Of a DNA stretch of 64,000 nucleotides, positions 27,349 through 61,212 are shown piece after piece. Below the pieces are notes generated by a model. That model made no database searches. It was not told where the DNA came from and saw only the letters and a program-made list of their open reading frames with translations. Numbering within the stretch: the stretch's first letter is position 1; every line of letters starts with the position of its first letter. Source of the DNA: Convolutriloba macropyga. Its lineage: Eukaryota. The stretch lies in contig NC_134468.1 of assembly GCF_964194025.1 (NCBI RefSeq), positions 1,488,001 through 1,552,000 on the forward strand, in the 5' to 3' direction. Position numbers and translations under genes: made by a program.

Positions 27349-28040
27349 AATGTAATAAGATTAGGTATAGCCGCGGCAATGTATTAAGATTAGATATAGC
27401 CAACGCAATGTATTAAGATTAGGTACAGCCGCCGCAATGTATTAAGATTAGGTATAGCCGCCGCAATGTATTAAGATTAGGTAAAGCTGCCGCAATATAT
27501 TAAGATTAGGTATAGCCGCCGCAATGAATTAAGAGTAGGTATAGCCGCCGCAATGTATTAAGATTAGGTATAGCCGCCGCAATGTATTAAGATTAGGTAA
27601 AGCTGCCGCAATATATTAAGATTAGGTATAGCCGCCGCAATGAATTAAGAGTAGGTATAGCCGCCGCAATGTATTAAGATTAGGTATAGCCGCCGCAATG
27701 TGTTAAGATTAGGTATAGCCGCCGCAATGTATAAGATTAGGTATAGCCGCCGCAATGTATTAAGATTAGGTAAAGCTGCCGCAATATATTAAGATTAGGT
27801 ATAGCCGCCGCAATGAATTAAGAGTAGGTATAGCCGCCGCAATGTATTAAGATTAGGTATAGCCGCCGCAATGTGTTAAGATTAGGTATAGCCGCCGCAA
27901 TATATTAAGATTAGGTATAGCCGCCGCAATGAATTAAGAGTAGGTATAGCCGCCGCAATGTATTAAGATTAGGTATAGCCGCCGCAATGTGTTAAGATTA
28001 GGTATAGCCGCCGCAATGTATTAAGATTAGGTATAGCCGC
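27349..28040. repeat. 29-bp minisatellite (AATGTATTAAGATTAGGTATAGCCGCCGC), ~24 units, in the Polinton terminal region
   Basis: Head-to-tail units with no spacers and recurring variants; preceded by ~20-bp GCGCAGGGGAAT-type repeats at ~27199-27295. Confidence 0.95.
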
Positions 28041-33159: not shown

Positions 33160-33475
33160 AATGTAATAAGATTAGGTATAGCCGCGGCAATGTATTAAGA
33201 TTAGGTATAGCCAACGCAATGTATTAAGATTAGGTATAGCCGCCGCAATGTATTAAGATTAGGTATAGCCGCCGCAATGTATTAAGATTAGGTAAAGCTG
33301 CCGCAATATATTTAGATTAGGTATAGCCGCCGCAATGAATTAAGAGTAGGTATAGCCGCCGCAATGTATTAAGATTAGGTATAGCCGCCGCAATGTGTTA
33401 AGATTAGGTATAGCCGCCGCAATGTATTAAGATTAGGTATAGCCGCCGCAATGTATTAAGATTAGGTATAGCCGC
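33160..33475. repeat. 29-bp minisatellite, 11 units (duplicate copy)
   Basis: Same unit as 27349-28040. Confidence 0.95.
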
Positions 33476-39425: not shown

Positions 39426-40225
39426 ATGAGTTCTTTCACTGTTGAGTTGGTTTCCAACGCATCGTTTGATTGTTACCCAAACAATACATTAAGTTCATTC
39501 ACGAATGTCCTTAACCAATTAATCTTGATGGAGAATGGGAGGTAGCGGTAACAGAACTGTCGTATCCTTCCTTGTACCAAAACATAACAGAGGGTAAATT
39601 CTTCTATCTAGATGAAGCGACACCAGATACAAAACCTTCGGATTATTACACACTTGATCCAGGTCTATAACCCTCGATCTCTGATATTGTAAATGAAATG
39701 ACAGAAAAATTCAGGAGCATGAAATGTATGAAAAAATGCCAACCAAGTTAATTGTTAACAAAATTACACAGCCAATTTCTTTGATTCCTCCTAATGAGAA
39801 CTCTTTACTTGTCATTTTTAGTGCGGATTTTTGTAGTGTTTTTAGATGCGAAGAATTTGTTTAAGGTATGGGTGTTTTCATGAGTGGTGCTGGTCCACAT
39901 TTTCCCTTATGACATTGCACGAATACATACCTTAATGATATATAGGGATATTGTTGAATACACTACTGAGGGTGATACAAAAGCTTCTCTTTTACGATGC
40001 ATTCCGTTTATATCAAAAGTTAAGAATGGAGACATCATCTCAACGGGACAATACATGAATTATCAAAATTTTCCAAACTTGCAATTTAAAAAATTCTAAA
40101 AAAACTCATTCCACAGCATAAAACCCGAGCTCCGGGACTCTTATGGTGAAAAAGTTTCTTTCAACTCTGTTGGTGTAACAAGAGCAGTACTAATGTTAAG
40201 AAAAACTGGTGAGCATCTTTTTTAG
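39426..40225 (+). pseudogene. Minor capsid protein (penton-like), fragmented
   Basis: FTVELVSNASFDCYPNNTLSSFTN, INLDGEWEVAVTELSYP, IYRDIVEY…GDTKASLLRCIP. Confidence 0.8.
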
Positions 40226-40242
40226 ATTTAATGTTGTAAAAA

Positions 40243-40590
40243 ATGCTTGTTTATAGTGATTTATCGTATTTTCGTGGTTATTCAAGACAGACGGGAAGAT
40301 GATTCGGAGTGTTGGCACAAACAATTGGAGGACAGCTATTCCATTCTTGAGGAGATATGTTGATATGTTATCCCAGCAGCAAAAACAGTTGGTGCAGATT
40401 AGCTTGATATAGCTGCACCAGAAATTGGAAATGTTCTAACTGGAAAGAAAAAATTCAAATCCGTGGCTGCAGATGTTGGAAAGTAAACATTACGTAAACA
40501 GCTTGGTGGTTGAAAAATTGGGAAACGTTTCAAAAGAATCCCCGTAAACCAGTCGACGTCGTCGAACTGTAAGAGATATTTTTCTAAGCT
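40243..40590 (+). pseudogene. Small basic/amphipathic Polinton core-like protein, decayed (duplicated at ~43190-43540)
   Basis: YFRGYSRQTGR.FG.LAQTIG…IPFLRRY…PAAKTVGA…LRKQLGG sits just upstream of the major capsid gene. Confidence 0.6.
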
Positions 40591-40592
40591 AA

Positions 40593-40840
40593 AATGATTA
40601 CTAGATCAACAAACCATAGCAACTTTCGTTATCGTCACTTTACAAACTCTTGCTTGGAGATTTTTGGCAAAATTCCTGTTTTGAACCAATTGAATCTTCT
40701 CGCGTTCAAGAAGCTTATCCCAGTATTTCATTAGATGAAAGCAGCATTGACTTTGAGTTTAAAACAGATAGAAGTATATATGTATTGATATGAGAGATAT
40801 CCACCTTCAAATGAAAGTTGGTTTACAACAGGGAAGATTT
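40593..40840 (+). pseudogene. Major capsid (hexon-like) 5' fragment, cut off by a LINE (duplicated at ~43541-43785)
   Basis: QEAYPSISLDESSIDFEFKTDRSIY-IDMRDIHLQMKV resembles Polinton MCP N-termini; the sequence then switches to minus-strand RT. Confidence 0.65.
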
Positions 40841-40844
40841 TCAT

Positions 40845-43012
40845 TGACTTTATGAATCGCTTTAAGGGTAATGTCATCCAAGTTGAGACCTTTAAGTATG
40901 TCAGATAAGTACTCTCTGTCAATTTTATCATAAGCTTTGGAGAAGTCAATATTCAGTACACAGCGAGAAGGATTAAGTAAATTGATTCGTTTTAGTATAG
41001 AGTGAAGCGCAGAGTGAATACTACGATTGGGTAGGTAGGCGAATTGAAAGGTGTTAATAATTTTGTTTAAAACTGTTTTCACACATTATGACAAGATATG
41101 CGACAGGATCTTAACATCAGTGTTAAGGAGATTTATAGGGCGAAAATCTTTCAGTCCAGAAATTTCTTAAGAAGTTTGATGATTGAAAGGTTTTGACTGG
41201 GAGGAGGTAATTTGTAATCAATAGCTGTGTTGTAAATTTTACTTGAGATAGGAGATCATTCCCGATTTAAAAGGCGATAAAAAGTAGGAGTTAGGCCATC
41301 AGCTCCTGAAGCACTTCTATTCAGTTTATTGATAGCTTTTTGGACTTCATCAGTAATATAACCACCAATTTCAATCTCTTTGCCAATCAAATGCTTTTCG
41401 CATATTTTCTGAATAAGAGGGCAACAGTTGCTCGGAGATTTTTTCTGATATATATCTTCAAAATAGGTAATCTAATACGTATTTATGGATTTCGAGATGA
41501 GAGCTATTATTGACCGAATTCTTGTGGTCTTTCCAGTTTTTGAGGAGTTTAGGGTTACCGTCGTTGCAGAGTCTCCAGTTACGTTTGAATATTATGTCAT
41601 TGTCAAGATGTTCTTTAGTCTCTATGGATACCAGTTCATTTTTAGTCTTTGAAATTCTTCAAATGAAGAGGAAGAGTTGTCTCCACATTCAATGTTCTGA
41701 GTTAAAAGTAGTAATCTGTTTGTAAGTTTTTGTTTATGCTCTTTCTCTACCGTGTTCTTGACAATGGACAAAGAACGAAAGAGATCTCGTATGAAGAGTT
41801 TTCTTTCTTCTTATTCTAAGGAGATGTCATCGGCAGAGTGGTCAAAAGCATTTATTTGGGTAGCAATAAGGTCTTTATTTGGTAATAGGATATTTTCATT
41901 GAGTTTCCAAGGAGTTGTTCCGCGATCTTGTTGTGCTGAAGGGGGTATTAATTGTAGCATAAAATGATCAGAAATTGTAGACTGATGAGTCTTAATTGAA
42001 GTAAAGCTACAATTGGCTGGTGTAAAGAAATAGTTCATGCGAGAGAAAGTTTTATGCTGTTTATCATAATGGGTAGAATGGATGTTGTCTGTCAGGACAG
42101 CAAAGAAAGTCATGCAAGTAATGTTGTCGGATGGGATCGGTGATTTTGAAGAACCGTTTGATTTGAATGTCGTAAGTGCGTAAGCTACGGGATGAGTTTA
42201 TAGGGTTTTTGTCAAAAGGATTAAAATCTCCTGCCAGAATAATTTCTGTGTTGTTAGAAAAAAAGTTAAGAGCTGAATTTACATTGTTGCAAGCCTGTTC
42301 AAATATTCTGCCGCTTAAATAAATGTTGCAAATTGAGATATTGTGGGAGCATAGGTAAAGTAATTGGCAGGATTCATTAATTTGTAACAAAAAGGTGGTG
42401 CCTAAATCTGAGTTCCAAGCAATATGGAGACCACCACATCTATCTGAAGCCGGAAGAAAGTGAAATTGTAGTTTGAATTTGTCAATTAGAGCTTTTTGAG
42501 CGACTTTAAGGACTGAACATTCGATTTCTTGCAGACAAAGTACAAAGTTTTCTGTAGTTTTATGTTTTAGGCAGAGATTAAGCATAGCTTTTAATTTGAT
42601 AGAGTTCGACATGCCACCAGCATTTAAAGAAATTATGTTGAGAGCCATATAAGAAAGTTATAGTGGAGCATCCCGGTCAATGTGATGGGAAAGAAGCATA
42701 TTAGATTCTTCTTCTGTTTCCTCTTCTGTCTGTCGCGTTGTTTCTTGCCTGCTTTATTAGTTTTCACTCGTTTGCCAAAGGTAGGCGAGAAAGAGGAAAA
42801 GATCGTAAGTTGTCTCCTATCAGAGAGAACTTGAAAGGCATCATCATCAAGAAGAAGATGTACGTCATTGAGGTTTGTGAGATCTTTATTTGATCCTTCT
42901 GGATCACATTCTGAAAGATTCGAGATGGAATTTCGATCCTCTATAAAAGAGAAAGACGATTGAAGATTGGGTAGTATAGGGTCATCACAGAGTGAGACAA
43001 TTGGAACTTGTT
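40845..43012 (-). mobile_element. L1/Tx1-like family B, partial duplicate (APE endonuclease to mid-RT)
   Basis: SLNAGG, LCLQE, ILAGDFN, ISDH, WKLN, IDFSKAYDKIDR; many frameshifts. Confidence 0.85.
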
Positions 43013-43787
43013 GAGACAATTGGAACTTGCAATTTAAAAAATTCTAAAAAACTCATTCCACAGCATAAAACCCGAGCTCCGGGACTCTTATGGTGAAAAA
43101 CTTTCTTTCAACTCTGTTGGTGTAACAAGAGCAGTACTAATGTTTAGAAAAACTGGGGAGCATCTTTTTTAGATTTAATGTTGTAAAAAATGCTTGTTTA
43201 TAGTGATTTATCGTATTTTCGTGGTTATTCAAGACAGACGGGAAGATGATTCGGAGTGTTGGCACAAACAATTGGAGGACAGCTATTCCATTCTTGAGGA
43301 GATATGTTGATATGTTATCCCAGCAGCAAAAACAGTTGGTGCAGATTAGCTTGATATAGCTGCACCAGAAATTGGAAATGTTCTAACTGGAAAGAAAAAA
43401 TTCAAATCCGTGGCTGCAGATGTTGGAAAGTAAACATTACGTAAACAGCTTGGTGGTTGAAAAATTGGGAAACGTTTCAAAAAAATCCCCGTAAACCAGT
43501 CGACGTCGTCGAACTGTAAGAGATATTTTTCTAAGCTGAAATGATTACTAGATCAACAAACCATAGCAACTTTCGTTATGGTCACTTTACAAACTCTTGC
43601 TTGGAGATTTTTGGCAAAATTCCTGTTTTGAACCAATTGAATCTTCTCGCGTTCAAGAAGCTTATCCCAGTATTTCATTAGATGAAAGCAGCACTTTGAG
43701 TTTAAAACAGATAGAAGTATATATGTATTGATATGAGAGATATCCACCTTCAAATGAAAGTTGGTTTACAAAAGGGAAGATTTTCAT

Positions 43788-46700
43788 TGACTTTATGAAT
43801 CGCTTTAAGGGTAATGTCATCCAAGTTGAGACCTTTAAGTATGTCAGATAAGTACTCTCTGTCAATTTTATCATAAGCTTTGGAGAAGTCAATATTCAGT
43901 ACACAGCGAGAAGGATTAAGTAAATTGATTCGTTTTAGTATAGAGTGAAGCGCAGAGTGAATACTACGATTGGGTAGGTAGGCGAATTGAAAGGTGTTAA
44001 TAATTTTGTTTAAAACTGTATTCACACATTATGACAAGATATGCCACAGGATCTTAACATCAGTGTTAAGGAGATTTATAGGGCGAAAATCTTTCAGTCC
44101 AGAAATTTCTTAAGAAGTTTGATGATTGAAAGGGTTTGACTGGGAGGAGGTAATTTGTAATCAATAGCTGTGTTGTAAATTTTACTTGATAGGAAATCAT
44201 TCCCGATTTAAAAGGCGATAAAAAGTAGGAGTTAGGCCATCAGCTCCTGAAGCACTTCTTCTATTCAGTTTATTGATAGCTTTTTGGACTTCATCATCAG
44301 TAATATAACCACCAATTTCAATCTCTTTGCCAATCAAATGCTTTTCGCATATTTTCTGAATAAGAGGGCAACAGTTGCTCGGAGATTTTTTCTGATATAT
44401 ATCTTCAAAATAGGTAATCTAATACGTATTTATGGATTTTGAGATGAGAGATATTATTGACCGAATTCTTGTGGTCTTTCCAGTTTTTGAGGAGTTTAGG
44501 GTTACCGTCGTTGCAGAGTCTCCAGTTACGTTTGAATATTATGTCATTGTCAAGATGTTCTTTAGTCTCTATGGATACCAGTTCATTTTTTAGTCTTTGA
44601 AATTCTTCAAATGAAGAGGAAGAGTTGTCTCCACATTCAATGTTCTGAGTTAAAAGTAGTAATCTGTTTGTAAGTTTTTGTTTATGCTCTTTCTCTACCG
44701 TGTTCTTGACAATGGACAAAGAACGTAAGAGATCTCGTATGAAGAGTTTTCTTTCTTCTTATTCTAAGGAGATGTCATCGGCAGAGTGGTCAAAAGCATT
44801 TATTTGGGTAGCAATAAGGTCTTTATTTGGTAATAGGATATTTTCATTGAGTTTCCAAGGACTTGTTCCGCGATCTTGTTGTGTTGAAGGGGGTATTAAT
44901 TGTAGCATAAAATGATCAGAAATTGTAGACTGATGAGTCTTAATTGAAGTAAAGCTACAATTGGCTGGTGTAAAGAAATAGTTCATGCGAGAGAAAGTTT
45001 TATGCTGTTTATCATAATGGGTAGAATGGATGTTGTCTGTCAGGACAGCAAAGAAAGTCATGCAAGTAATGTTGTCGGATGGGATCGGTGATTTTGAAGA
45101 ACCGTTTGATTTGAATGTCGTAAGTGCGTAAGCTACGGGATGAGTTTATAGGGTTTTTGTCAAAAGGATTAAAATCTCCTGCCAGAATAATTTCTGTGTT
45201 GTTAGAAAAAAAGTTAAGAGCTGAATTTACATTGTTGCAAGCCTGTTCAAATATTCTGCCGCTTAAATAAATGTTGCAAATTGAGATATTGTGGGAGCAT
45301 AGGTAAAGTAATTGGCAGGATTCATTAATTTGTAACAAAAAGGTGGTGCCTAAATCTGAGTTCCAAGCAATATGGAGACCACCACATCTATCTGAAGCCG
45401 GAAGAAAGTGAAATTGTAGTTTGAATTTGTCAATTAGAGCTTTTTGAGCGACTTTAAGGACTGAACATTCGATTTCTTGCAGACAAAGTACAAAGTTTTC
45501 TGTAGTTTTATGTTTTAGGCAGAGATTAAGCATAGCTTTTAATTTGATAGAGTTCGACATGCCACCAGCATTTAAAGAAATTATGTTGAGAGCCATATAA
45601 GAAAGTTATAGTGGAGCATCCCGGTCAATGTGATGGGAAAGAAGCATATTAGATTCTTCTTCTGTTTCCTCTTCTGTCTGTCGCGTTGTTTCTTGCCTGC
45701 TTTATTAGTTTTCACTCGTTTGCCAAAGGTAGGCGAGAAAGAGGAAAAGATCGTAAGTTGTCTCCTATCAGAGAGAACTTGAAAGGCATCATCATCAAGA
45801 AGGGGATGTACGTCATTGAGGTTTGTGAGATCTTTATTTGATCCTTCTGGATCACATTCTGAAAGATTCGAGATGGAATTTCGATCCTCTATAAAAGAGA
45901 AAGACGATTGAAGATTGGGTAGTATAGGGTCATCACAGAGTGAGACAATTGGAACTTGTTGTAAAGAGTTTTTTTCTTGTTACTTGTTAGTAGTAGTAGA
46001 CTAATTGTCTTGTATTGTAAGTATGTGTTATTGGAGCGAGAGTATTAGTTTTCTTTTCAATATCAGTAGTTTTAAGTGCCATAGTAGAAGTGACTTTGAT
46101 AGTTGCATCATTATTTGAGCTGCCAGTAGTTGAGTCCGTAGTAGATATAGAAGTAGCATTATTGGAAGCTTCTTTAGTGGATTGTTCTTTACTAGAAGTC
46201 TCTAGACGTTTCGCTCTTGTTTTTAGCAGCAAAAGAACACTAATCTGTGTGGTGTCCTCGGCTGAGTATATTTGATGCAGAGCAATGTTCACAGTGATGT
46301 AATGAAGGGAAGTGATAGTTGACTACAAAAGAGTTCTATAAAAAAATCACCACTTGTCCTTGCTTTGTATGACCACTCACATAGAGTAGTTTCTTGCTCA
46401 GAATTGGATATGGTGACATTCAATGTGGCCTTGCCATTATAACAAGAAACAGAACCAAGTGAATCCTGTTCTCCAACAAGGGCAAACTCGTGTTGAATTT
46501 CTGGAGGAAGCTCTATAAGTCTTTTGACAGTAATGTCAACGCAAATTTTAGGTAAATTGTTGAATTTTATTTTGACTTTTTTGGGGTAACATTGGATTGA
46601 GAGGTCGAGTTTAAATCTTCTAATAGGAAACACAGTTCTATTGCGTATTTGTAAACCTTGTGTTCCGATTCTTATATAAGTCGAAATGGTGTGAAGTCTT

Positions 46701-48124
46701 TTACCATCTTTAAAAAACGTTTTGGAAATAGTGAGCTTAGAGTGTAAATTTTCAGGAAATTGTTGTAGAATAGAACTTACACGTTCTTTTCATTTGAGTT
46801 GTAATTTGGAAGAATCTTTGAAATCATCCTTCGTAAACGGAGGAATAAATTGAATGTATTGTAAATCAATTTCAGATTGTAAAGTATTATTGGGTTTATT
46901 ATTTTATTATCATAAAATATTGGAATAAGACATCGTTGATGAGGGTAAAGCCATTATATTGAATATATGAATAAGAAATTCAATATAAAGTTTGAAGCAA
47001 TTGTTGTTTCAGGGATCAGAGTTTTGATCAGACTTGACGCTATTCGAATACCTGCTATAATTCAGCGACACAGTAATCACATCAGTTGGACAAACTGACT
47101 GGGAGTTATAAATCAAAGTAAACATCAAAATATACAGCAATAAAATGAAAGTGGAATTAACTGAATATGAATGCCAACAGGAAATAGTCTAAAGGTAAAA
47201 TAAACTACACAATCTAAATAATCTAAACAAATAAAGGATAACAAAATGAAAAGAGATAATTACAAATAAAAGGTAACAAAAGGAAAAGAAATAATTATAA
47301 ATCCAGGGAAACAAAAAGAAAGTAAAAATTACAAATAACAGTAACTCAAACATATAAATCTAAAACTATTGAACTAAAACAAAAGAACTGATGAACTGAA
47401 CTAATACTAATAGAGAATGGAAAAAAAGGCAAATGCAGTAAAGTAACAGGAATAAAAAAAAGTTATGAAGAGGGTGGAGGGGAGGGGGTTGGTTGGTTGA
47501 GAGGTGGGGGAAAAGGACGCAGGTAATGGAATAGTAAACTTAAAATTTGCAGAAATAGAGAATTTAAATTTGAAAATTAAAAGTATTAAAAATAAACAAG
47601 AAAATTACAGCATAAGAGTTTGCAATTACAAAGAAGATTTGAATAAATTCATTTATAATTTGTTGTAATAACGGGGCTGAAAAATGAATGGAATATATGA
47701 ATGGAATTCATCATATCAGGTAAGCAGTAAAGAAAGGGTAATCAGGTTATAGAAATCAAGGTGAAAATGATGATTTAGAAAAAAAGCAATAACCCTTAGA
47801 TTTTTATTGCTATAGCGGGGAATGAACCCCCGTCCTGTTTCCTACCAGAATAGTCCCGCAGATCAATTTGTAGGTATACGTGAATTACTACAGGGACTCT
47901 TATAAACTAATGTTAGAACAAGAATATAAGTAGATTTTGTAAGCGTAGATTTTATATGAGGGTATAGGTTATATATAAAGAATAGTGAAATGGACGAGAA
48001 AGAAGTATATTATGGGCGCAAAACTGTTCATATTTGTGCTGTCCGGAAGATACGAAAATCTACATTTCAAATCTGTGAGCAACCAAATCATATTAGCCGA
48101 CAAATAAAGCAATAATTAATAGAC
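43788..48124 (-). mobile_element. L1/Tx1-like family B, 3'-truncated: ~1.17-kb leader, ORF1 (ATG 46954) and ORF2 endonuclease to mid-RT; decayed
   Basis: ORF1 fragments are homologous to family C (YPKKVKIKFNNLP, knuckle CEHC…HHTD*C); ORF2 APE and RT motifs. Confidence 0.85.
47811..47905 (-). ncRNA. Putative conserved structured RNA in family B leader (copy at 54821-54915)
   Basis: Multi-helix fold with compensatory changes relative to the family C version. Confidence 0.55.
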
Positions 48125-48134
48125 ATTTGAACTT

Positions 48135-51100
48135 TATACCGTGCGGGAGGCACGATAATCATGTTTTTCAATCTACTGGAAACTAAAGCACAGTAGACTT
48201 CAACAGGTTCTGAATATTTAAAATAAAAAGGAGAAGTTACATTATGACAGCATTATACACAATCAGGCAAAAACAAATTTTTCAAACAGTTGTTCATTTA
48301 GTTTTCTACATTTTGAATGAAGTTTGAGAGAAAAGTTTTTGTGTCAACTGGGTTATCTAGCCATCCTGTCAATAGAACACTAGTAACAAACCGTAGTTTT
48401 GAATTCGATGCTGTAACAAAAACATCTTCCAAAGATGAGACATCGTATTGGGTGCGTAAATGCGTGAGATTGTTACAATTAAAAAGCAGATGCTCAGAAG
48501 TTTCAAACTCCTCTTGACAAAAACTGCAAAGTGGGGATTCAGCTTAATAGTGAAGCCATCGTACTTGTTTGTCAATCAAAGTATTATAACATAGTCGGAA
48601 AAGCAAATCCTTTTGATATGGTAACAGTTTATCCGCTTTCCAGAGTTTCCAAGGGAAGGGTTTAAGAGTTTCATAATCTATATTGAATCGGGCAGCAGAT
48701 TTCCGAAGTCGTTCACAGTTTGAATCTTTAAATTTGAACATTAACATGTTATACACTCTTTTGAACATCGGCGTAGGATGCAAACTTAGTGATGGGATAT
48801 CTTGGTCGGAGACAAGCTGCATGTCATCATTGATGACGAAGTGAAAATGCTGTAGTAGCTTTAAACCATCAGGATTGTAATTGATGGTATTGCGCGCAAA
48901 ATCAAGTACATGGGCAGCAACAAGTTTAGCAGGAACATGCGGAAGCCCAATTCCACCATTTGCCACATTGCCACATTTGCCATGCAGAATTTCAGCTTTT
49001 GCTTCCATTTTCTTTCCAATCTTCAATAAGGAATTCACTTCTGCTTGGCACTTTTTAACACCGTTAAGGTGGGATTTGCATGTCTCGCTTTGTAGAGGAA
49101 CTTCGGTAATACAAAAGTATCTATTGCGAGAGCCTTTGCTCTCATTGTTCTGCAGCGGGCAACGGTACATTTATTTTTATTGATTAACTGTTTCATCAGC
49201 GCTAATAGATCAGTTTTAGGGTCATCAAGGTTGAAAGAAATATCCAGAATCTTCGTTTCTTTCACAGAATTATACCCATTCAAATTACGCATGGATAATA
49301 TAACCGACTTGTCAATATTGATTTCCAATGAAGTTTGATCACAGAAGTCACTGATTACATCAAATAGCGTTTCCAGGGATTTTATTTTTATGCAACAGGT
49401 GATGTCATTAGCATAGGCAATTGTTTTTCTCCGAAAAGGTCTTTATTTGCCCACATTCTTCTATTTCCTTCAGAAGAGGCTCAACACCTAATATGAACAA
49501 CAAGGCTGATAATGGACATCCTTGTTTAACTCCACGGTTGATGCTGAGTGGGGTAGAAAGATGACCATTTATTTCAATGAGAGCTACATTCGAATTATAC
49601 ATTACTTTGATTGCGCGAATAGTCATTTCATCAAAATTAAATGCTGTGAGTAATTCATACAAGTAATTTCTGTCGATTTTATCAAAGGCTTTGGAAAAGT
49701 CAATAGACACTAGACGGCGACTACGGTTCAACTTTTTCACTTTTTTCTTTATTATATGAATTGCTGAATGAATGTTCCTCTGTGGCAGATAAAATTGGTG
49801 CGGATTTATTATTTTGTTCAAAGCATTCTTGATCCGTTCTGTTAGAATGTGAGACAGTATTTTAACATCTGTGTTCAGTAGATTGATAGGGCGAAAGTCT
49901 TTCAGATGATCAGAAATTTTCTTTTCAGGAAGCAATTTAATGACTGAGAGGCATTGACTTGGTGGTAAACATCCTTTAATGATAGCGTCATTGTAGACGA
50001 GACATAAAATAGGGCTTAGCTCCCTGATAAAAGTACGATGGTAATTAGAGGTGAGCCCATCAGCGCCAGGAGCACTCTTGCAATTTAATTTTCTGATAGC
50101 CTTCCTTACTTCACTGACCGTTATTTCACCACCCACTTCTATGTCACTCTACTTGATTAGAAACACAGAACTTTTCAATAAGTTTTGAGCTATCAGATCT
50201 AGGTTTTTGTTGATATATTTCTTCGAAGTATGACTTGAAGACTGACAAGATTTTAGTCGGGCAATTGATCGTATCACCATCCATTTTTAAATACGAGATA
50301 ATGTTCGAAGTGTTATTAGAATTCTTCCACTGTTTGGGGATTACCATCATTACATTGTCTCCAACTTTTTTTGAAGAAACTTTCATTTAGTTTTTGCTCT
50401 TTTGCTTCAACTGAATGCACTTCATCTAGGATTTCACGAAATTTGTTCCTTACATCAAAAATTTGATCACCATTTTCAATGACTTTTCGAAGCTCATATT
50501 CAGCGTCCTCGAGCCTCTTTGTACGACTGTTCAATGTTTCTTTTATTAATGGACAGCACACGCAACAGATCACGCATGAACAGATTTTGCTGTTCATAAT
50601 CAAGTATGATATCATCAGACTGAACGTCAAATGTTCTCAAATGTTGAGAAAGAAACTGGTAATTGGGCTTAATGATACTTTCATTGAGTTTCCAGTAACT
50701 TGTGCCTCTTTCAGGTCTATTCTTTGATGAACTGAGGTGTAATAAGTAATGGTCTCAGTAAGAATTTCTATGCACTTGCATGTAGTCAAATTTGGTTGAA
50801 CTTCTAGTAAAGAAGTAGTCAATTCTAGAGGGGAAAGCTGTCGTTTATCAAAATGTGTATATTGTAAATTACTGAAAAAAAAGAGCAAAGTCGAAGAGGC
50901 AATGTTTTTCCAGAACTTCAGAAAGCTTTTTAAAGCGAGATATACGAACGTCATTTTGCCGCAGGGCATTTGAAGTGTTTTCTTTCTGACAATCGAACGC
51001 ATTAAAATCCCCTGCTAGAATTATTGCACTGTTGTGTACAAAGTTGAGTGTATTCTGCAAATTAGTCCAAGCATCCACATACATACACCAACTCATGTAC

Positions 51101-53503
51101 ACATTGCATACAGTAATATCTAAGTCACAGAAATGTAACAATTGACAAGTTTCTTTGCTTGAAAATAAAGAAGTAGTACCCAAGTTTTTGCTCCATAAAA
51201 TGAGAAGCCCGCCGGATTTACCTGTTGCGGCATTAAAGTGATAGTCAAGTTTAAATTTATCTAATAGTGCTTTTTGAGCATTTTTCAGATACGAGCACTT
51301 CATTTCCTGTAGACAAATTATAAAGTTATTATTAGATTTCTGACGAGACAAGTGAAATTTCATCTTTTTGCAATCGCGGATCTTTTAACCAGGTTTATTC
51401 ACTTTTTGGCGCTTTTCATCTATTTCTGAAAGCGCTTTAGGACTATCATTAGAAGTTTTGAAGTGTCGTTTCTGTCTCACTAACTGAAACGGATATTCCG
51501 AATTAGGGTGATCAATATTTGACCAAAGCAGAAGTTTAGAAGATTTTTTTTCATCAGAAAGGTCAGCGATTTGAAGATCTGTACACAGACTTTCATCAGA
51601 GCTTGAATCAGAATTTTCAGAAAGCGGATAATATTTATTTTCAACGAATTGCTTCGTATTAACACTGCTGTTTTTGTCTAAAGCATTCGCGTCTTGAGAA
51701 GAGTCCTTATCTTTGTGCTCAATTGTCGTTCTTTCAATTTCTTTTGCTGGAGTTAGAGGCATAGTTGTAGCAACTGCGCTTTGATCGCTTACAAGCTCGT
51801 TATTTTGTTCAACCGTAATACAAGGAGTATTTTGTAGTTCAACAGTATCATGAGTAAGTGTTGTGTATTTATTTTCTAGTTGTATATTAGTGTCAGCAGA
51901 AGTAGCGTTGTTGGATATTGCGTTTTCATCAACGGTTTTCTGTTTTGCAGCAAGCAGACACCAGTCAACATGATGTCCCTGATAAAGTTTTTTGTGTTTT
52001 ACACAAAAGTCGCATTTGTGTAACGAGGGAACATGAAAGCGAATAGCTACATTATTCCACATCACACACTCCCATTCTTGCGTTATAGGACCAATCTCTG
52101 AGAAGAGTTTCTTGCTCAGAATCAGACACCGTTACACTAAGTGTAGCTTTCCCATTAAAAAAGGACTCATCATTACAGTTCTTTTCTTTTTTGATGGCAG
52201 TGTCATGAATAATGTTCGGTGGTAAGCATAATAAATGTTTTACAGCTACTTTATTGCAAATCACTGGTAAATTGTTGAATTTGATGTGAACTTTCTTGGG
52301 GTAAAAGGCCATTGAATAAGGGTTAAGTGGCATTTTGTCCATCGGGAAGACTGTTTTGCCAAGAATTTGCAGGCCTTGAGTACGAATTTTGATATAAGTG
52401 AGCTTTGCTTCTGGGGGAGATATGACAGTTATACTGTGAAGCAGCTTGTCTTTACTCTTTGTAAAAGTTTTTGAAATTTTAACTTTTTCTTTCAAGTCAC
52501 TGGGGAACTCGTCCAAGATAACTTTTGCACAATCACGAAAACATTGCTCAAGTTTATTGGGGTCTGTAACATCATTTTGGATAGTGGGGGAATAAATTGC
52601 ACTATTTGTAACTTTTGTCGTCAAAAGCAACATGTTTTTCAACGTGAGTTACACTCGCATAGCTAGAGGGAGAATCCATCTTTAATCAAATTAACAACAA
52701 ACTAACTGAATATGAAAGCATGAAAAAATCTTAAGATAAATTAAACTAAGAAAAAACAAAGGATCAACGCAAACATAAATAACACTAATGCACCAAAACG
52801 AAAGAAATGATGAAATGAACTAATGAAAAGTGGTAAAATAACAGGAATAAAGAGAAAACAGTGACTTAACAGGAAAGTAACGGGAGTGAAATAAAGTACG
52901 GAATGAAAAAAAGAGGGAAATAACAGTTATGAAGAGGATGGAGGGGGGGGTTGAGAGGTGACAGGGGAATGAAATAATAAATTTAAAAAATACAGAAATA
53001 AAGGATTTAAGTTTGAAAATTAAAAGTATTAAGAATGTAGAAGAATTTATTTACAGGATATAAAATTAAACAGGATAAGAAGAACCTTCATAATTTGTTA
53101 GAATAACGGAATTCTGGGAGAAAATGACAATTCTGACTTAAAAAAAGGAATAACCCTTAGATTTTTTGGGGTTAGGGCGGGGAATGAACCCCCGGCCTGT
53201 TTCCTACCAGACTAGTCCCGCAGATCAACTAGTAGGTATACGTGACTTTACTACTGGGACTCTTAACAGCTAATGTTAGAACAAGAATAAGAGTGGATTT
53301 TGTAAGCGTAGGTTTTACATGGGCGAATAGGATATAAATAAAGAACAGTAAAATGGACGAGAGTGAAGTAAAACATGGGCGCAAACAATTCATATTTGTA
53401 CTGTCCGGAACGTACGATAATCTACTTTTCAAATCTATGTGAAACCAAGTGATATAAGCCGACACCAGGTTAGTGTATTCCGCCATTTAGTTTTTAGGTT
53501 ACA
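48135..53503 (-). mobile_element. L1/Tx1-like family C, near full length, copy 1 (122-bp deletion removes the ORF2 start)
   Basis: 10-bp direct repeats ATTTGAACTT at 48125-48134 and 53504-53513. ORF1 from ATG 52679 (SYAS motif, zinc knuckle). ORF2 has APE, RT (APGADG, FRPINLLNTDVKI, DFSKAFD, GVKQGCPLS, YAND at 49404-49415) and C-terminal CSFC…EHLLFNC. Confidence 0.9.
53171..53268 (-). ncRNA. Putative conserved structured RNA in family C leader (copy at ~60304-60401)
   Basis: Same fold as in family B with covarying pairs. Confidence 0.55.
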
Positions 53504-53675
53504 ATTTGAACTTGCCTATCGTGTACTGGTTAAAATCTAAATCGGTTTTGTTTTAGCTGGTAATGATCACATTTTCTTAAGATTAGGAAGGAAGCTCGGT
53601 CCTTCTTTTTCTACGTTTCGTTGACACTTAGTAGCACTACTTTTCATTTTGATAATTTGATTACTGCGCGCTGTT

Positions 53676-55134
53676 CGATTCTTATATAAGTCGAAATGGT
53701 GTGAAGTCTTTTACCATCTTTAAAAAACGTTTTGGAAATAGTGAGCTTAGAGTGTAAATTTTCAGGAAATTGTTGTAGAATAGAACTTACACGTTCTTTT
53801 CATTTGAGTTGTAATTTGGAAGAATCTTTGAAATCATCCTTCGTAAACGGAGGAATAAATTGAATGTATTGTAAATCAATTTCAGATTGTAAAGTATTAT
53901 TGGGTTTATTATTTTATTATCATAAAATATTGGAATAAGACATCGTTGATGAGGGTAAAGCCATTATATTGAATATATGAATAAGAAATTCAATATAAAG
54001 TTTGAAGCAATTGTTGTTTCAGGGATCAGAGTTTTGATCAGACTTGACGCTATTCGAATACCTGCTATAATTCAGCGACACAGTAATCACATCAGTTGGA
54101 CAAACTGACTGGGAGTTATAAATCAAAGTAAACATCAAAATATACAGCAATAAAATGAAAGTGGAATTAACTGAATATGAATGCCAACAGGAAATAGTCT
54201 AAAGGTAAAATAAACTACACAATCTAAATAATCTAAACAAATAAAGGATAACAAAATGAAAAGAGATAATTACAAATAAAGGGTAACAAAAGGAAAAGAA
54301 ATAATTATAAATCCAGGGAAACAAAAAGAAAGTAAAAATTACAAATAACAGTAACTCAAACATATAAATCTAAAACTATTGAACTAAAACAAAAGAACTG
54401 ATGAACTGAACAAATACTAATAGAGAATGGAAAAAAAGGCAAATGAAGTAAAGTAACAGGAATAAAAAAAAGTTATGAAGAGGGTGGAGGGGAGGGGGTT
54501 GGTTGGTTGAGAGGTGGGGGAAAAGGACGCAGGTAATGGAATAGTAAACTTAAAATTTGCAGAAATAGAGAATTTAAATTTGAAAATTAAAAGTATTAAA
54601 AATAAACAAGAAAATTACAGCATAAGAGTTTGCAATTACAAAGAAGATTTGAATAAATTCATTTATAATTTGTTGTAATAACGGGGCTGAAAAATGAATG
54701 GAATATATGAATGGAATTCATCATATCAGGTAAGCAGTAAAGAAAGGGTAATCAGGTTATAGAAATCAAGGTGAAAATGATGATTTAGAAAAAAAGCAAT
54801 AACCCTTAGATTTTTATTGCTATAGCGGGGAATGAACCCCCGTCCTGTTTCCTACCAGAATAGTCCCGCAGATCAATTTGTAGGTATACGTGAATTACTA
54901 CAGGGACTCTTATAAACTAATGTTAGAACAAGAATATAAGTAGATTTTGTAAGCGTAGATTTTATATGAGGGTATAGGTTATATATAAAGAATAGTGAAA
55001 TGGACGAGAAAGAAGTATATTATGGGCGCAAAACTGTTCATATTTGTGCTGTCCGGAAGATACGAAAATCTACATTTCAAATCTGTGAGCAACCAAATCA
55101 TATTAGCCGACAAATAAAGCAATAATTAATAGAC
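53676..55134 (-). mobile_element. Duplicate of the family B 5' portion (leader and ORF1 start)
   Basis: Matches 46666-48124 at offset 7010. Confidence 0.9.
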
Positions 55135-55144
55135 ATTTGAACTT

Positions 55145-58100: not shown

Positions 58101-60636
58101 TCATGTACACATTGCATACAGTAATATCTAAGTCACAGAAATGTAACAATTGACAAGTTTCTTTGCTTGAAAATAAAGAAGTAGTACCCAAGTTTTTGCT
58201 CCATAAAATGAGAAGCCCGCCGGATTTACCTGTTGCGGCATTAAAGTGATAGTCAAGTTTAAATTTATCTAATAGTGCTTTTTGAGCATTTTTCAGATAC
58301 GAGCACTTCATTTCCTGTAGACAAATTATAAAGTTATTATTAGATTTCTGACGAGTGCATTGATTTAAAACGGCCAACAATATATTAGCTTTACCGAGAC
58401 CAGCGGCATTGAGAGAGAATAGGTCAAAATTCATCTTGTCCATTAGTACTGAGGAGCGTCTCGGTCATTATGACGAGACAAGTGAAATTTCATCTTTTTG
58501 CAATCGCGGATCTTTTAACCAGGTTTATTCACTTTTTGGCGCTTTTCATCTATTTCTGAAAGCGCCTTAGGACTATCATTAGAAGTTTTGAAGTGTCGTT
58601 TCTGTCTCACTAACTGAAACGGATATTCCGAATTAGGGTGATCAATATTTGACCAAAGCAGAAGTTTAGAAGATTTTTTTTCATCAGAAAGGTCAGCGAT
58701 TTGAAGATCTGTACACAGACTTTCATCAGAGCTTGAATCAGAATTTTCAGAAAGCGGATAATATTTATTTTCAACGAATTGCTTCGTATTAACACTGCTG
58801 TTTTTGTCTAAAGCATTCGCGTCTTGAGAAGAGTCCTTATCTTTGTGCTCAATTGTCGTTCTTTCAATTTCTTTTGCTGGAGTTAGAGGCATAGTTGTAG
58901 CAACTGCGCTTTGATCGCTTACAAGCTCGTTAATTTGTTCAACCGTAATACAAGGAGTATTTTGTAGTTCAACAGTATCATGAGTAAGTGTTGTGTATTT
59001 ATTTTCTAGTTGTATATTAGTGTCAGCAGAAGTAGCGTTGTTGGATATTGCGTTTTCATCAACGGTTTTCTGTTTTGCAGCAAGCAGACACCAGTCAACA
59101 TGATGTCCCTGATAAAGTTTTTTGTGTTTTACACAAAAGTCGCATTTGTGTAACGAGGGAACATGAAAGCGAATAGCTACATTATTCCACATCACACACT
59201 CCCATTCTTGCGTTATAGGACCAATCTCTGAGAAGAGTTTCTTGCTCAGAATCAGACACCGTTACACTAAGTGTAGCTTTCCCATTAAAAAAGGACTCAT
59301 CATTACAGTTCTTTTCTTTTTTGATGGCAGTGTCATGAATAATGTTCGGTGGTAAGCATAATAAATGTTTTACAGCTACTTTATTGCAAATCACTGGTAA
59401 ATTGTTGAATTTGATGTGAACTTTCTTGGGGTAAAAGGCCATTGAATAAGGGTTAAGTGGCATTTTGTCCATCGGGAAGACTGTTTTGCCAAGAATTTGC
59501 AGGCCTTGAGTACGAATTTTGATATAAGTGAGCTTTGCTTCTGGGGGAGATATGACAGTTATACTGTGAAGCAGCTTGTCTTTACTCTTTGTAAAAGTTT
59601 TTGAAATTTTAACTTTTTCTTTCAAGTCACTGGGGAACTCGTCCAAGATAACTTTTGCACAATCACGAAAACATTGCTCAAGTTTATTGGGGTCTGTAAC
59701 ATCATTTTGGATAGTGGGGGAATAAATTGCACTATTTGTAACTTTTGTCGTCAAAAGCAACATGTTTTTCAACGTGAGTTACACTCGCATAGCTAGAGGG
59801 AGAATCCATCTTTAATCAAATTAACAACAAACTAACTGAATATGAAAGCATGAAAAAATCTTAAGATAAATTAAACTAAGAAAAAACAAAGGATCAACGC
59901 AAACATAAATAACACTAATGCACCAAAACGAAAGAAATGATGAAATGAACTAATGAAAAGTGGTAAAATAACAGGAATAAAGAGAAAACAGTGAATTAAC
60001 AGGAAAGTAACGGGAGTGAAATAAAGTACGGAATGAAAAAAAGAGGGAAATAACAGTTATGAAGAGGATGGAGGGGGGGGGGTTGAGAGGTGACAGGGGA
60101 ATGAAATAATAAATTTAAAAAATACAGAAATAAAGGATTTAAGTTTGAAAATTAAAAGTATTAAGAATGTAGAAGAATTTATTTACAGGATATGAAATTA
60201 AACAGGATAAGAAGAACCTTCATAATTTGTTAGAATAACGGAATTCTGGGAGAAAATGACAATTCTGACTTAAAAAAAAGGAATAACCCTTAGATTTTTT
60301 GGGGTTAGGGCGGGGAATGAACCCCCGGCCTGTTTCCTACCAGACTAGTCCCGCAGATCAACTAGTAGGTATACGTGACTTTACTACTGGGACTCTTAAC
60401 AGCTAATGTTAGAACAAGAATAAGAGTGGATTTTGTAAGCGTAGGTTTTACATGGGCGAATAGGATATAAATAAAGAACAGTAAAATGGACGAGAGTGAA
60501 GTAAAACATGGGCGCAAACAATTCATATTTGTACTGTCCGGAACGTACGATAATCTACTTTTCAAATCTATGTGAAACCAAGTGATATAAGCCGACACCA
60601 GGTTAGTGTATTCCGCCATTTAGTTTTTAGGTTACA
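55145..60636 (-). mobile_element. L1/Tx1-like family C, full length (~5.49 kb), copy 2, inactivated
   Basis: TSD ATTTGAACTT at 55135-55144 and 60637-60646; ORF1 ATG 59809; ORF2 ATG 58443; shares most frameshifts and the YAND motif with copy 1. Confidence 0.9.
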
Positions 60637-61212
60637 ATTTGAACTTGCCTATCGTGTACTGGTTAAAATCTAAATCGGTTTTGTTTTAGCTGGTAATGAT
60701 CACATTTTCTTAAGATTAGGAAGGAAGCTCGGTCCTTCTTTTTCTACGTTTCATTGACACTTAGTAGCACTACTTTTCATTTTGATAATTTGATTACTGC
60801 GCACTGTTCGATAGAAAGTTTTGAGCTACAAACTACGTTATCTGCAAAAGAAATTGATGCCCATCATTATTTTCACCGTTAAAAACCAATTATGTTTGAG
60901 AGCCTTTTGGAAGATGAAGTCACACAACGTCTCATGGGATGTGAAAAATATCTTTGAATCTAATATGTTTGAAATGTAATCAAATGCTTATTTTTGTCCT
61001 TATTAGTTCTCGTTTATTTAACGATAAGAAAGTGTTCAGTCAACGATGAAGTAATTTGAATATTCCATTACTTCTCGCAAAAAGGCTTAGCAAGGCAGTA
61101 TAAATAGATTTCATAAATATTCCAGTTATGTAGTCTGTGAAGTAGAGTTGCTGTTGTATTAGAAAATAGAAGTCAATGAGGAATTGTCGTAAAGTATCAT
61201 TGATTTGTTTAG

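What the first reader, a model, noticed from the sequence alone, without database searches (positions are those of the whole stretch)
47789..47930. Covarying multi-helix RNA shared by leaders of two divergent L1/Tx1 families
Seen (minus strand). B: UAUA-AG-AGUCCC-UGUAG-loop-CUACA-..-GGGACU-A-UUCUG-GUAGGAAA-CAGGA-CGGGG-GUUCAUU-CCCCG-C-UAUA. C (53171-53268): GUUA-AG-AGUCCC-AGUAG-loop-CUACU-..-GGGACU-A-GUCUG-GUAGGAAA-CAGGC-CGGGG-GUUCAUU-CCCCG-CCC-UAAC. Compensatory changes occur in three helices (U-A>A-U, U-A>G-C, UAUA/UAUA>GUUA/UAAC). The invariant loop GUAGG can alternatively pair with CCUAC (pseudoknot/switch), and the last hairpin is T-arm-like. The core is far more conserved than the endonucleases, which are under about half identical by eye. 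Known: several non-LTR clades carry 5' HDV-like or hammerhead ribozymes, but I could not fit this motif to HDV, hammerhead, twister or pistol. Inference: an undescribed ribozyme, IRES-like or tRNA-mimic processing element. Only two independent sequences support the covariation.
Basis: partly seen in the sequence, partly recalled or inferred. Interest (0 to 1): 0.85.

Follow-up and report, generated by a model that had tools for sequence, protein, structure and literature searches.

The report
tRNA-derived folded RNA in LINE leaders
A sharply bounded, roughly 120-base RNA fold descended from a tRNA-Asp gene sits in the leader of many diverged LINE jumping-gene families of this animal genome and keeps its base pairing through compensating mutations, so the elements probably need it, although what it does is still unknown.

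Summary
Both copies are at the stated places. Each is doubled by a 7-kb tandem duplication, so the window holds four copies but only two independent ones.

A covariance model found about 40 copies in this genome, in at least five diverged groups. All copies with enough flanking sequence to check lie 0.3-1.1 kb upstream of a LINE ORF1 on the same strand. Between groups, the module is the only nucleotide similarity within 1.5 kb on either side. It runs from the first helix to a T-run.

- **Supported pairings:** three helices (H1, H3, H4) and a loop-loop pairing (CCUAC with GUAGG) keep pairing through compensating changes.
- **Not conserved:** The pairing it listed as an "alternative" is the conserved one.
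- **Origin:** the last hairpin and the bases before it match this genome's own tRNA-Asp(GTC) T arm. tRNA-style box A and box B motifs are present. There is no cloverleaf, and no Rfam, tRNA or known-ribozyme match.
- **Position:** the module starts about 200 nt inside the element, not at its 5' end.

My best reading is a cis-acting, tRNA-derived, pseudoknotted 5'UTR domain. A Pol III transcription unit is the main rival. No RNA data were available.

The parts
47779..47898 (-). Module copy B (H1 5' strand to T-run), in the leader of the 'B' LINE
   Evidence: CM R1 scores 149 bits.
53140..53261 (-). Module copy C, in the leader of the 'C' LINE
   Evidence: CM R1 scores 166 bits.
54789..54908 (-). 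Module copy B', a near-identical duplicate of B made by the 7,011-bp tandem duplication
60273..60394 (-). Module copy C', a near-identical duplicate of C made by the same duplication
47852..47898 (-). B: helix H1 (47893-47898 pairs with 47852-47857). Its roughly 35-nt apical region holds the box-A-like UAGUAAUUCAC (47880-47890) and the pseudoknot strand CCUAC (47870-47874).
47833..47850 (-). B: hairpin H3 (47846-47850 pairs with 47833-47837). Its loop GUAGG (47841-47845) pairs with CCUAC.
47816..47832 (-). B: hairpin H4, T-arm and box-B-like (CGGGG, loop GUUCAUU, CCCCG)
47779..47805 (-). B: tail, made of an A-run, the conserved CUAAGGGUUAUUGC and a T7 run
53214..53261 (-). C: helix H1 (53256-53261 pairs with 53214-53219), with box-A-like 53242-53253 and pseudoknot strand 53232-53236
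53178..53212 (-). C: H3 (53208-53212 pairs with 53195-53199; loop GUAGG at 53203-53207), directly followed by H4 (53190-53194 pairs with 53178-53182)
53140..53167 (-). C: tail, made of an A-run, CUAAGGGUUAUUCC and a T7 run
47899..48102 (-). B: upstream leader block shared with C at 83%. It is specific to group G-I and is not conserved in other groups.
53262..53464 (-). C: upstream leader block shared with B. It begins with AACCUGGUGUCGGCU.
48201..52642 (-). Body of LINE 'C': ORF1 pieces 51385-52642, endonuclease 50869-51363, reverse transcriptase 49408-50136, C-terminal region 48544-49170, a zf-RVT-like knuckle after an in-frame stop, and a 3' end reading ...CAGAACCUGUUG near 48201
40807..46633 (-). 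Body of LINE 'B': ORF1 piece 46289-46633, endonuclease 45012-45596, an internal 2.9-kb duplication, and a truncated reverse transcriptase

Best explanation
The feature is a discrete module of about 120 nt. It belongs to the 5'UTR of a broad set of L1/Tx1-like LINE lineages in this genome, and it starts about 200 nt inside the element and 0.3-1.1 kb upstream of ORF1.

Origin: it descends from a tRNA-Asp-like gene. It keeps the T arm, the bases of the variable loop and anticodon-stem 3' strand, and D-arm/box-A-like sequence. It lacks the anticodon arm and the cloverleaf.

Fold: it now has its own structure.
- H1 is a 6-8-bp stem with a roughly 30-nt apical region.
- H3 is a 5-bp hairpin.
- H4 is the T-arm hairpin and abuts H3 directly.
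- A 5-bp loop-loop pairing joins the H3 loop to the H1 apical region.
- A conserved tail follows (A-run, CUAAGGGUUAUUGC, U-run).

Proposed mechanism: it acts in cis as a folded domain of the element's own sense transcript. The most likely role is a docking platform for the element's proteins or for a host factor that binds tRNA-like shapes, helping RNP assembly, stability or translation.

Shown here: the module belongs to the elements, its limits are sharp, it has tRNA-Asp ancestry, and pairing is kept through compensating changes. Inferred: that it acts in cis, and what binds it.
For: 1. About 40 copies fall into at least five groups. All copies with enough flanking sequence to check have an ORF1 homologue downstream on the same strand. 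ORF1 identity to the window's elements falls to 23-38%.
2. Between groups, the module is the only nucleotide similarity within 1.5 kb either side, and its ends are sharp. C against L028 aligns from +10 to -2, and L041 against L045 from +9 to -6.
3. Pairing on alignment A7: 88.7% of cells pair against 80.7% in shuffles (0/500). The covariation score is 0.300 against 0.166 (0/500). Thirteen pairs change on both sides against 7.6 expected (1/500). Slid controls reach 53% or less.
4. Changes on both sides that are fixed in whole groups occur in H1 (UA/CG, CG/UA, CG/UA), in H3 (UA/AU; GC/UA in B) and in the pseudoknot (CG/UG/AU and UA/UG/CG).
5. The pseudoknot was not part of the search model, yet it pairs in 90% of cells.
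6. tRNA-Asp ancestry: the T arm and the preceding bases match with 0/500 shuffles for L009, L028 and L041.
7. Selection on structure in each lineage fits a cis-acting element better than a shared trans product. This point is inference.
8. Copies of one family on different chromosomes share 180-230 nt upstream of the module, so the copied RNA carries the module internally and uncut.
Against: - No RNA data exist for this organism in the served runs, so transcription and folding are untested.
- Predicted stability is ordinary. Z-scores run from -0.5 to -2.6, and the minimum-energy folds of three groups do not show H1/H3.
- On a structure-blind MAFFT alignment, the tree-robust counts for H1 plus the pseudoknot are not significant: 6 against 5.0 pairs (146/500).
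- The compensating changes are about seven events fixed in whole groups, not many independent ones.
- All sequences come from one genome. Two metagenome pattern scans gave nothing real.
- The H3 loop can also pair with a C-rich stretch after H4 in some groups, so the tertiary fold is not settled.
- The binding partner is pure inference.
Confidence: 0.45

Rival explanations
1. It is a Pol III (type 2) transcription unit embedded in the LINE leader. Box A and box B recruit TFIIIC, and the T-run terminates transcription. The unit yields a roughly 120-nt tRNA-derived small RNA, or it acts through TFIIIC binding as a chromatin opener or insulator for the element's own promoter.
For: - Conservation begins 8-10 nt before the box-A-like motif and ends at a run of four or more T.
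- Box A matches the tRNA form TRGCNNAGTNGG at 12/12 in groups G-III and G-IV. Box B GGTTCGANNCC is exact in G-II and one mismatch off in G-III and G-IV.
- In 446 kb scanned, exact matches number only 16 (box B) and 9 (box A), roughly the number of module copies.
- The T arm is identical to that of functional tRNA-Asp genes.
- There is a precedent for Pol III promoters inside retroelements: the Cassandra, Helenus and Ajax LTRs (PMC10886601).
Against: - Box B loses the invariant A58 in G-I and G-IV and gains a base in G-III. Box A is degenerate in G-I and G-II.
- A promoter that works only at the DNA level does not explain compensating changes in H1, H3 and the pseudoknot.
- A trans-acting product would be weakly selected in each lineage (inference).
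- T4 runs are common in a genome of 35% GC.
- No stand-alone or retroposed copies of the small RNA appear among the hits that could be checked.
Confidence: 0.25
2. It is a tRNA mimic cut by RNase P and/or RNase Z. The cut would trim read-through or tandem-array co-transcripts, as mascRNA does for MALAT1, or as HDV-like ribozymes do at the 5' ends of other LINEs.
For: - tRNA-Asp-derived T arm.
- H1, 'UA', H3 and H4 follow the order acceptor strand, U8-A9, D arm, T arm.
- The elements often lie head to tail.
- In some groups the H3 loop can pair with the strand after H4, like an acceptor stem stacked on the T arm.
Against: - Inherited copies keep about 200 nt upstream of the module, the module itself and everything downstream. 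The template RNA is therefore not cut on either side.
- There is no closing acceptor stem with free ends. H0 pairs in only 26% of cells.
- ARAGORN and the Rfam tRNA model do not recognise it.
- The spacing of the acceptor-like pairing varies by 1-4 nt.
Confidence: 0.1
3. It is a self-cleaving ribozyme of an undescribed class.
For: - It is a pseudoknotted multi-helix fold in a LINE leader, which is where HDV-like ribozymes occur in other clades (PMC3185411).
- Loop and junction bases are conserved.
Against: - No ribozyme family appears even at E up to 10.
- There is no P3/L3/P1.1 between the crossing strands, so it does not have the HDV topology. There is no CUGANGA...GAAA core conserved across groups.
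- The module is internal and is inherited intact with its upstream 200 nt.
Confidence: 0.03
4. It is a passive relic: a tRNA-derived SINE or tRNA fragment that once landed in an ancestral leader and has been spread by leader swapping, with no function.
For: - B and C share a uniform 340-nt block.
- Leaders are mosaic. L005 and L007 combine a B-type body with a C-like leader, and L039 carries a G-I module on a G-III-like body.
- The tree-robust covariation counts are not significant on the MAFFT alignment.
Against: - Everything around the module, including ORF1 at the nucleotide level, has diverged beyond detection, yet the module stays 70-80% identical with sharp edges.
- Group-fixed double changes keep pairing.
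Confidence: 0.07
5. It is not part of the LINEs at all. It is a multicopy host small-RNA gene beside which these site-specific elements insert.
For: - The elements look site-specific. The 3' end ...AACCUGGUG recurs next to UCGGCU....
- Module types and element bodies are mosaic.
- About 200 nt upstream is shared within families, as a gene promoter would be.
Against: - No empty copy was found. Every hit with enough flank has ORF1 downstream at a family-specific distance.
- Module variants track the LINE families.
- The element 3' ends abut the leader start, not the module.
Confidence: 0.04

Closest known systems
tRNA-Asp(GTC) genes of the same genome (for example L061:1493-1564, minus strand)
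   Same: - The T arm is identical or nearly so (CGGGG, UUCGAUU, CCCCG in G-II).
- The preceding variable-loop and anticodon-stem 3' bases match.
- The D-arm/box-A-like UAG..AGU motif is present.

   Different: - No anticodon arm, no cloverleaf and no free acceptor end.
- The acceptor-like stem H1 is closed by a 30-nt loop and lies 5' of the T arm.
- ARAGORN and Rfam do not call it a tRNA.
tRNA-derived SINE heads, and Pol III promoters inside retroelement LTRs (Cassandra, Helenus, Ajax; PMC10886601)
   Same: - A small-RNA-gene-derived piece with box A and box B, carried inside a retroelement.
- A T-run lies downstream.
   Different: - Here it sits in the 5'UTR of autonomous LINEs, not in a non-autonomous element.
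- Its RNA pairing is maintained by compensating changes.
- No independent SINE-like copies were seen.
Conserved internal 5'UTR domains shared by diverse RTE LINEs and SINE bodies (Ceph domain; PMC5786205)
   Same: A short conserved island in the middle of otherwise divergent LINE 5'UTRs, not at the 5' end, with unknown function.
   Different: - A different LINE superfamily (L1/Tx1-like architecture).
- A different sequence.
- Here a specific fold with a pseudoknot and tRNA ancestry is documented.
HDV-like ribozymes at LINE 5' ends (R2, L1Tc Pr77; PMC3185411, PMC3383444)
   Same: A structured, pseudoknotted RNA in the leader of non-LTR elements.
   Different: - No P3/L3/P1.1 core and no Rfam match.
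- The module is about 200 nt internal, and its upstream sequence is inherited.
R2 5' RNA pseudoknot that binds the element's protein (from my own knowledge: Kierzek et al. 2009; Christensen, Ye and Eickbush 2006)
   Same: A conserved pseudoknot in the 5' region of a site-specific LINE. I propose the same kind of job, docking of the element's protein.
   Different: No sequence or fold similarity was tested or seen, and binding is untested here. This is a functional analogy only.
MALAT1 mascRNA and viral 3' tRNA-like structures
   Same: tRNA-like features embedded in a long Pol II or viral RNA.
   Different: Those are full cloverleaf or acceptor mimics that are cleaved or aminoacylated at a defined end. 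This module has no free acceptor end and is not at an RNA terminus.

Membership tests
tRNA (Rfam RF00005 / ARAGORN cloverleaf) | Four-arm cloverleaf with an anticodon arm, detectable by tRNA models | tested here: not met
   ARAGORN finds no tRNA in the window or in 10 loci with modules. There is no RF00005 hit at E up to 10. The same tool does call the genome's real tRNA-Asp.
tRNA-derived sequence (ancestry only) | Significant sequence similarity to a tRNA gene of the same genome | tested here: met
   Local alignment of the module to tRNA-Asp covers 21-26 nt (T arm plus preceding bases). It was reached by 0/500 shuffles for L009, L028, L041 and C, by 1/500 for B and by 3/500 for L045. L038 was not significant.
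Pol III type 2 transcription unit | Box A (TRGCNNAGT(N)GG) about 10 nt after the start | tested here: inconclusive
   12/12 in G-III and G-IV at position 19 of the 133-136-nt segment. Only about 8/11 in G-I and G-II.
Pol III type 2 transcription unit | Box B (GGTTCGANNCC) | tested here: inconclusive
   Exact in G-II, and one mismatch in G-III and G-IV. There is a one-base deletion with loss of A58 in G-I, which includes both window copies.
Pol III type 2 transcription unit | A run of four or more T as terminator just after the conserved RNA | tested here: met
   Present at the 3' edge in 25 of the 29 aligned copies; four show no T4 run within the aligned segment. T4 runs are frequent by chance at 35% GC.
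Pol III type 2 transcription unit | A discrete small RNA made by Pol III | not testable with these tools
   No RNA runs are served for this organism.
HDV-like ribozyme | Nested double pseudoknot P1/P1.1/P2/P3/P4, with cleavage at its own 5' end | tested here: not met
   No Rfam HDV-family hit. Only 3-8 unpaired bases lie where P3/L3 should be. The upstream 200 nt are inherited.
Hammerhead, twister, pistol, hatchet and hairpin ribozymes | Family covariance model or conserved catalytic core | tested here: not met
   No hit at E up to 10 on G-I, G-III, G-IV or G-V copies.
tRNA-derived SINE | Short dispersed copies with a LINE-derived tail, independent of LINE bodies | tested here: not met
   Every hit with enough flank is followed by ORF1. 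No stand-alone copies were found among the roughly 40 best hits. The scan scored only the 150 best candidates.
L1/Tx1-type LINE (the host element) | APE endonuclease, reverse transcriptase and a C-terminal zinc knuckle, with a separate ORF1 | tested here: met
   Exo_endo_phos and RVT_1 are found. There is a weak zf-RVT hit at E 0.0037, below the cutoff. ORF1 has no Pfam family. Assignment to the Tx1 clade itself was not tested.
Conserved structured RNA (general) | Base pairs kept through changes on both sides, above controls | tested here: met
   (A7, fitted to H1/H3/H4): 13 pairs against 7.6 expected (1/500), with slid controls far lower; the pseudoknot pairs at 90%. Caveat: on MAFFT alignment A8 the pair-count measure is not significant.

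The most novel reading that the evidence does not exclude
The module is a new class of retrotransposon RNA device: a rearranged tRNA-Asp mimic without an anticodon arm, locked by a loop-loop pseudoknot, that L1/Tx1-like LINEs need for their life cycle. It might be a substrate or decoy for tRNA-handling enzymes, a shield against 5'-to-3' decay, or the docking site that couples the element's proteins to their own RNA. That would make it a host-factor-dependent counterpart of the HDV-like ribozymes and 5' pseudoknots of other LINE clades.
Probability: 0.2. Interest if true: 0.85.

Novelty: new variant of a known kind. Interest (0 to 1): 0.62.

Why it matters
LINE leaders are usually the fastest-changing and least understood part of these elements. 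Here, a 120-nt fold of tRNA origin stays recognisable and keeps its pairing across LINE families. The proteins of those families are only 23-50% identical, and the rest of their leaders is unalignable.

If the module is functional, it gives a concrete and testable handle on how L1/Tx1-type elements control their own RNA, through assembly, stability, translation or Pol III/TFIIIC recruitment. It would also add a case of a tRNA gene being rebuilt into a new RNA fold. In addition, it would be a new RNA family for annotation, and a marker for full-length elements of this group.

Tried and rejected
- **Rfam:** the whole window at gathering scores gave nothing. Local scans at E up to 10 on G-I, G-III, G-IV and G-V copies gave only noise: SAM-V, a psbA 3'UTR, snoRNA and miRNA models.
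- **ARAGORN:** no tRNA or tmRNA in the window or in the module loci.
both rejected as conserved helices.
- **HDV-like fit by hand:** the crossing strands H3 and loop:trailing could stand for P1 and P2, but there is no room for P3/L3. Rejected.
- **H3 loop pairing with the C-rich strand after H4 (an acceptor-like stem):** present in L005, L007, L008, L028, L036 and L037, but absent in B, L003, G-III and G-IV, and with variable spacing. I keep it only as a possible alternative conformation.
- **Thermodynamic stability as evidence:** weak.
- **Cross-species homologues:** two metagenome pattern scans gave no hit and then two chance hits that the model rejects. No eukaryote collection was available.
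- **Expression:** two run searches found only DNA assemblies. Laying them on the window showed DNA unitigs with flat depth, no joints and no ends.
- **Spliced leader:** earlier notes say LINEs of this genome often start with the spliced leader. The published Symsagittifera roscoffensis leader (PMC9911081) is not in the window or in any fetched locus, so it does not explain these leaders.
- **Literature:** full-text searches found no description of a tRNA-like or pseudoknotted module in L1/Tx1 leaders.
Full report
**What is at the coordinates**

The window contains a 7,011-bp tandem duplication: 46661-53679 is repeated at 53672-60812 at 99.6% identity. Two more copies, B' (54789-54908) and C' (60273-60394), are therefore near-identical duplicates and not independent evidence.

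B and C each lie upstream of a LINE on the same strand.
- C lies upstream of ORF1 51385-52642, endonuclease 50869-51363, reverse transcriptase 49408-50136 and a zinc-knuckle remnant after an in-frame stop.
- B lies upstream of an ORF1 piece at 46289-46633 and an endonuclease at 45012-45596.

B and C share a block of about 340 nt at nearly uniform identity: 83.3% over the 204 nt upstream and 87.6% in the module. The flanks drop to 36-45%. The B/C pair alone therefore does not show a core that is more conserved than its leader. It looks like a leader recently shared between two families.

**Wider sampling in the same genome**

The window is part of a 1.18-Gb animal assembly. Earlier notes of this scan call it an acoel. 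A DNA search found five further copies. Covariance models built from them (R1, R2) found about 40 copies.

The copies fall into at least five groups:

| Group | Members |
|---|---|
| G-I | B, C, L003, L005, L007, L008, L039 |
| G-II | L009, L028-L034, L035-L038 |
| G-III | L040-L043, L047, L053 |
| G-IV | L045, L046, L049-L052, L054 |
| G-V (decayed) | L055-L057 |

All copies with enough flank have an ORF1 homologue 0.3-1.1 kb downstream on the same strand. ORF1 identity to the window's elements falls to 23-38%.

Between groups, the module is the only detectable nucleotide similarity within 1.5 kb either side, and its limits are sharp. C against L028 aligns from 10 nt after my segment start (the first base of H1) to 2 nt before its end in the T-run. 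L041 against L045 aligns from +9 to -6, and L009 against L028 from +7 to -2.

Within a family, copies on different chromosomes share sequence from about 180-230 nt upstream of the module. The module is therefore internal to the element, about 200 nt from its 5' end.

Leaders are mosaic. L005 and L007 combine a B-type body with a C-like leader, and L039 combines a G-I module with a G-III-like body.

**The fold**

Three nested helices hold in all groups:
- H1: AGUCCC/GGGACU in the window, extended to 8 bp in G-III and G-IV.
- H3: a 5-bp hairpin with a loop of 8-13 nt.
- H4: CGGGG/CCCCG with a loop of 7-8 nt, starting directly after H3.

The H3 loop (GUAGG in the window) pairs with CCUAC in the apical region of H1.

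On the model-fitted alignment A7 (34 rows), 88.7% of cells pair against 80.7% in shuffles (0/500). Thirteen of 21 pairs show changes on both sides against 7.6 expected (1/500). The covariation score is 0.300 against 0.166 (0/500). Sliding the partners by 1-3 columns drops pairing to 31-53%.

Changes on both sides that are fixed in whole groups are:
- H1: UA/CG, CG/UA and CG/UA at three positions.
- H3: UA/AU, and GC/UA in B.
- Pseudoknot: CG, UG and AU at its first pair, and UA, UG and CG at its third.

The pseudoknot was not in the search model. With a one-base register correction for G-II, it pairs in 90.3% of 145 cells.

Four caveats apply.
- On a structure-blind MAFFT alignment, H1 plus the pseudoknot still pair in 83.4% of cells against 73.9% (0/500). 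The tree-robust counts, however, are not significant: 6 against 5.0 pairs (146/500).
- The support rests on about seven group-level events in one genome.
- Minimum-energy folding is unremarkable, with z-scores from -0.5 to -2.6, and it does not recover H1/H3 in three groups.
- In some groups the H3 loop can also pair with a C-rich stretch after H4. An alternative conformation is therefore possible.

**Origin**

The genome has at least 83 matches to a tRNA-Asp(GTC) pattern, and ARAGORN confirms one as a gene. The T arm of that tRNA and the bases before it are identical or nearly so to H4 and the 3' strand of H3. For example, 23 of 26 positions match in L009, and the score was reached by 0/500 shuffles for L009, L028, L041 and C.

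The H3 5' strand and loop resemble tRNA-Asp positions 8-21. A second box-A-like motif follows the H1 5' strand.

- The tRNA form of box A is matched 12/12 in G-III and G-IV.
- Box B is exact in G-II and one mismatch off in G-III and G-IV.
- In G-I, which includes both window copies, box B has lost a base.

The order H1 3' strand, UA, H3, H4 mirrors the tRNA order acceptor strand, U8-A9, D arm, T arm. The anticodon arm is missing, and the acceptor-like stem is closed by a loop instead of having free ends. This comparison is my reading of the alignments, not a tested fold.

No Rfam family, tRNA model or known ribozyme model matches.

**How it most likely works**

The elements copy the module together with about 200 nt upstream of it. 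The template RNA is therefore not cut at the module. That argues against a ribozyme or an RNase P/Z site that defines the RNA end.

ORF1 starts hundreds of bases downstream, so an IRES that places the start codon is unlikely.

Compensating changes in H1, H3 and the pseudoknot point to selection on the RNA, not only on DNA promoter boxes. Selection maintained separately in each lineage fits a cis-acting part of the element's own transcript better than a shared trans product. This last point is inference.

I therefore favour a cis-acting folded domain that docks the element's proteins or a host factor recognising tRNA-like shapes (confidence 0.45).

The main rival, at 0.25, is a working Pol III unit, giving either a small RNA or a TFIIIC-bound boundary. 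It explains the coincidence of the conserved edges with box A and the T-run. It does not explain the decay of box B in three groups or the covariation.

The remaining rivals are processing (0.10), a neutral relic spread by leader swapping (0.07), a host gene used as an insertion target (0.04) and a new ribozyme (0.03).

**What is known**

I found no description of such a module in full-text searches. The nearest precedents are:
- tRNA- or 5S-derived Pol III promoters inside LTRs of non-autonomous elements (PMC10886601);
- unexplained conserved islands inside RTE 5'UTRs that are shared with SINE bodies (PMC5786205);
- HDV-like ribozymes at LINE 5' ends (PMC3185411);
- from my own knowledge, the protein-binding 5' pseudoknot of R2.

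This is a new variant of those kinds: a tRNA-Asp-derived, pseudoknotted module in the leaders of autonomous L1/Tx1-like LINEs.

**Limits**

- No RNA data exist in the served runs.
- No other eukaryote genomes could be searched, and the metagenome scans gave nothing real.
- The in-genome scans scored only the 150 best candidates each.

Noticed in passing
window 46661-53679 and 53672-60812: A 7,011-bp tandem duplication at 99.6% identity. It doubles the C element and the first 1.1 kb of the B leader. It could be a recent segmental duplication or an uncollapsed assembly feature.
   Followed up: partly
window 40076-43013 and 43024-45961: A 2.9-kb tandem duplication (98.9%) inside the B element doubles its endonuclease and part of its reverse transcriptase.
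   Followed up: no
window 48201-48209, 53463-53471, 60596-60604; L016:3486-3494; L012:3179-3187; L018:2469-2477: Element 3' ends read ...AUAUUCA(G/A)AACCUGGUG with no A-tail. The same AACCUGGUG followed by UCGGCU opens the G-I leaders and also a 1.5-kb repeat ('X') that precedes the module in two neighbouring elements. This suggests insertion into the 5' region of sister elements, or a 9-15-nt terminal redundancy.
   Followed up: partly
G000:C1:4036400-4045476 (L016-L018): Two C-type LINEs that are only 72-75% identical in body each carry a 97%-identical 1.5-kb repeat X upstream of their module. One of them has an extra 160-nt X-start fragment between the module and ORF1.
   Followed up: partly
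L040-L043, L047: 0-60 nt after the module: In G-III, the tail motif GG(U)UAUUGCUUA is repeated two or three times just downstream of the module. This looks like a reiterated binding site.
   Followed up: no
G000:C9:34260123-34371632; also C10:2680598-2699316: Dense arrays of tRNA-Asp(GTC) genes: over 50 pattern matches within 110 kb, spaced 370-750 bp apart. Several have mutated anticodon loops.
   Followed up: no
G000:C7:54724694-54740325 and C16:6163698-6173890: Head-to-tail arrays of G-II and G-IV LINEs, with a period of about 5 kb (4.8-5.3 kb) between modules.
   Followed up: partly
window 48544-48546: A stop codon interrupts ORF2 of the C element just before its zinc-knuckle motif (CxxC...H...C). 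The frame continues for 81 more codons.
   Followed up: partly
window 61779-63596 (+): A 605-aa open frame with an HTH_psq domain, in a region of higher GC. It may be a pogo/Tigger-type transposase or a domesticated relative.
   Followed up: no
window 27332-28040 and 33143-33475; 7369-24300: A tandem array with a period of 29 nt or a multiple of it, inside a 5.4-kb duplicated unit. Separately, a long array of roughly 1.4-1.7-kb repeats with strong T-over-A skew.
   Followed up: no
window 47840-47884: In runs X5 and X7, both from sample S2, the contig covering copy B differs at five positions plus one insertion inside the module. Runs X1 and X2 show none; X2 is also listed as sample S2. This is an allele or a close paralogue.
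   Followed up: no
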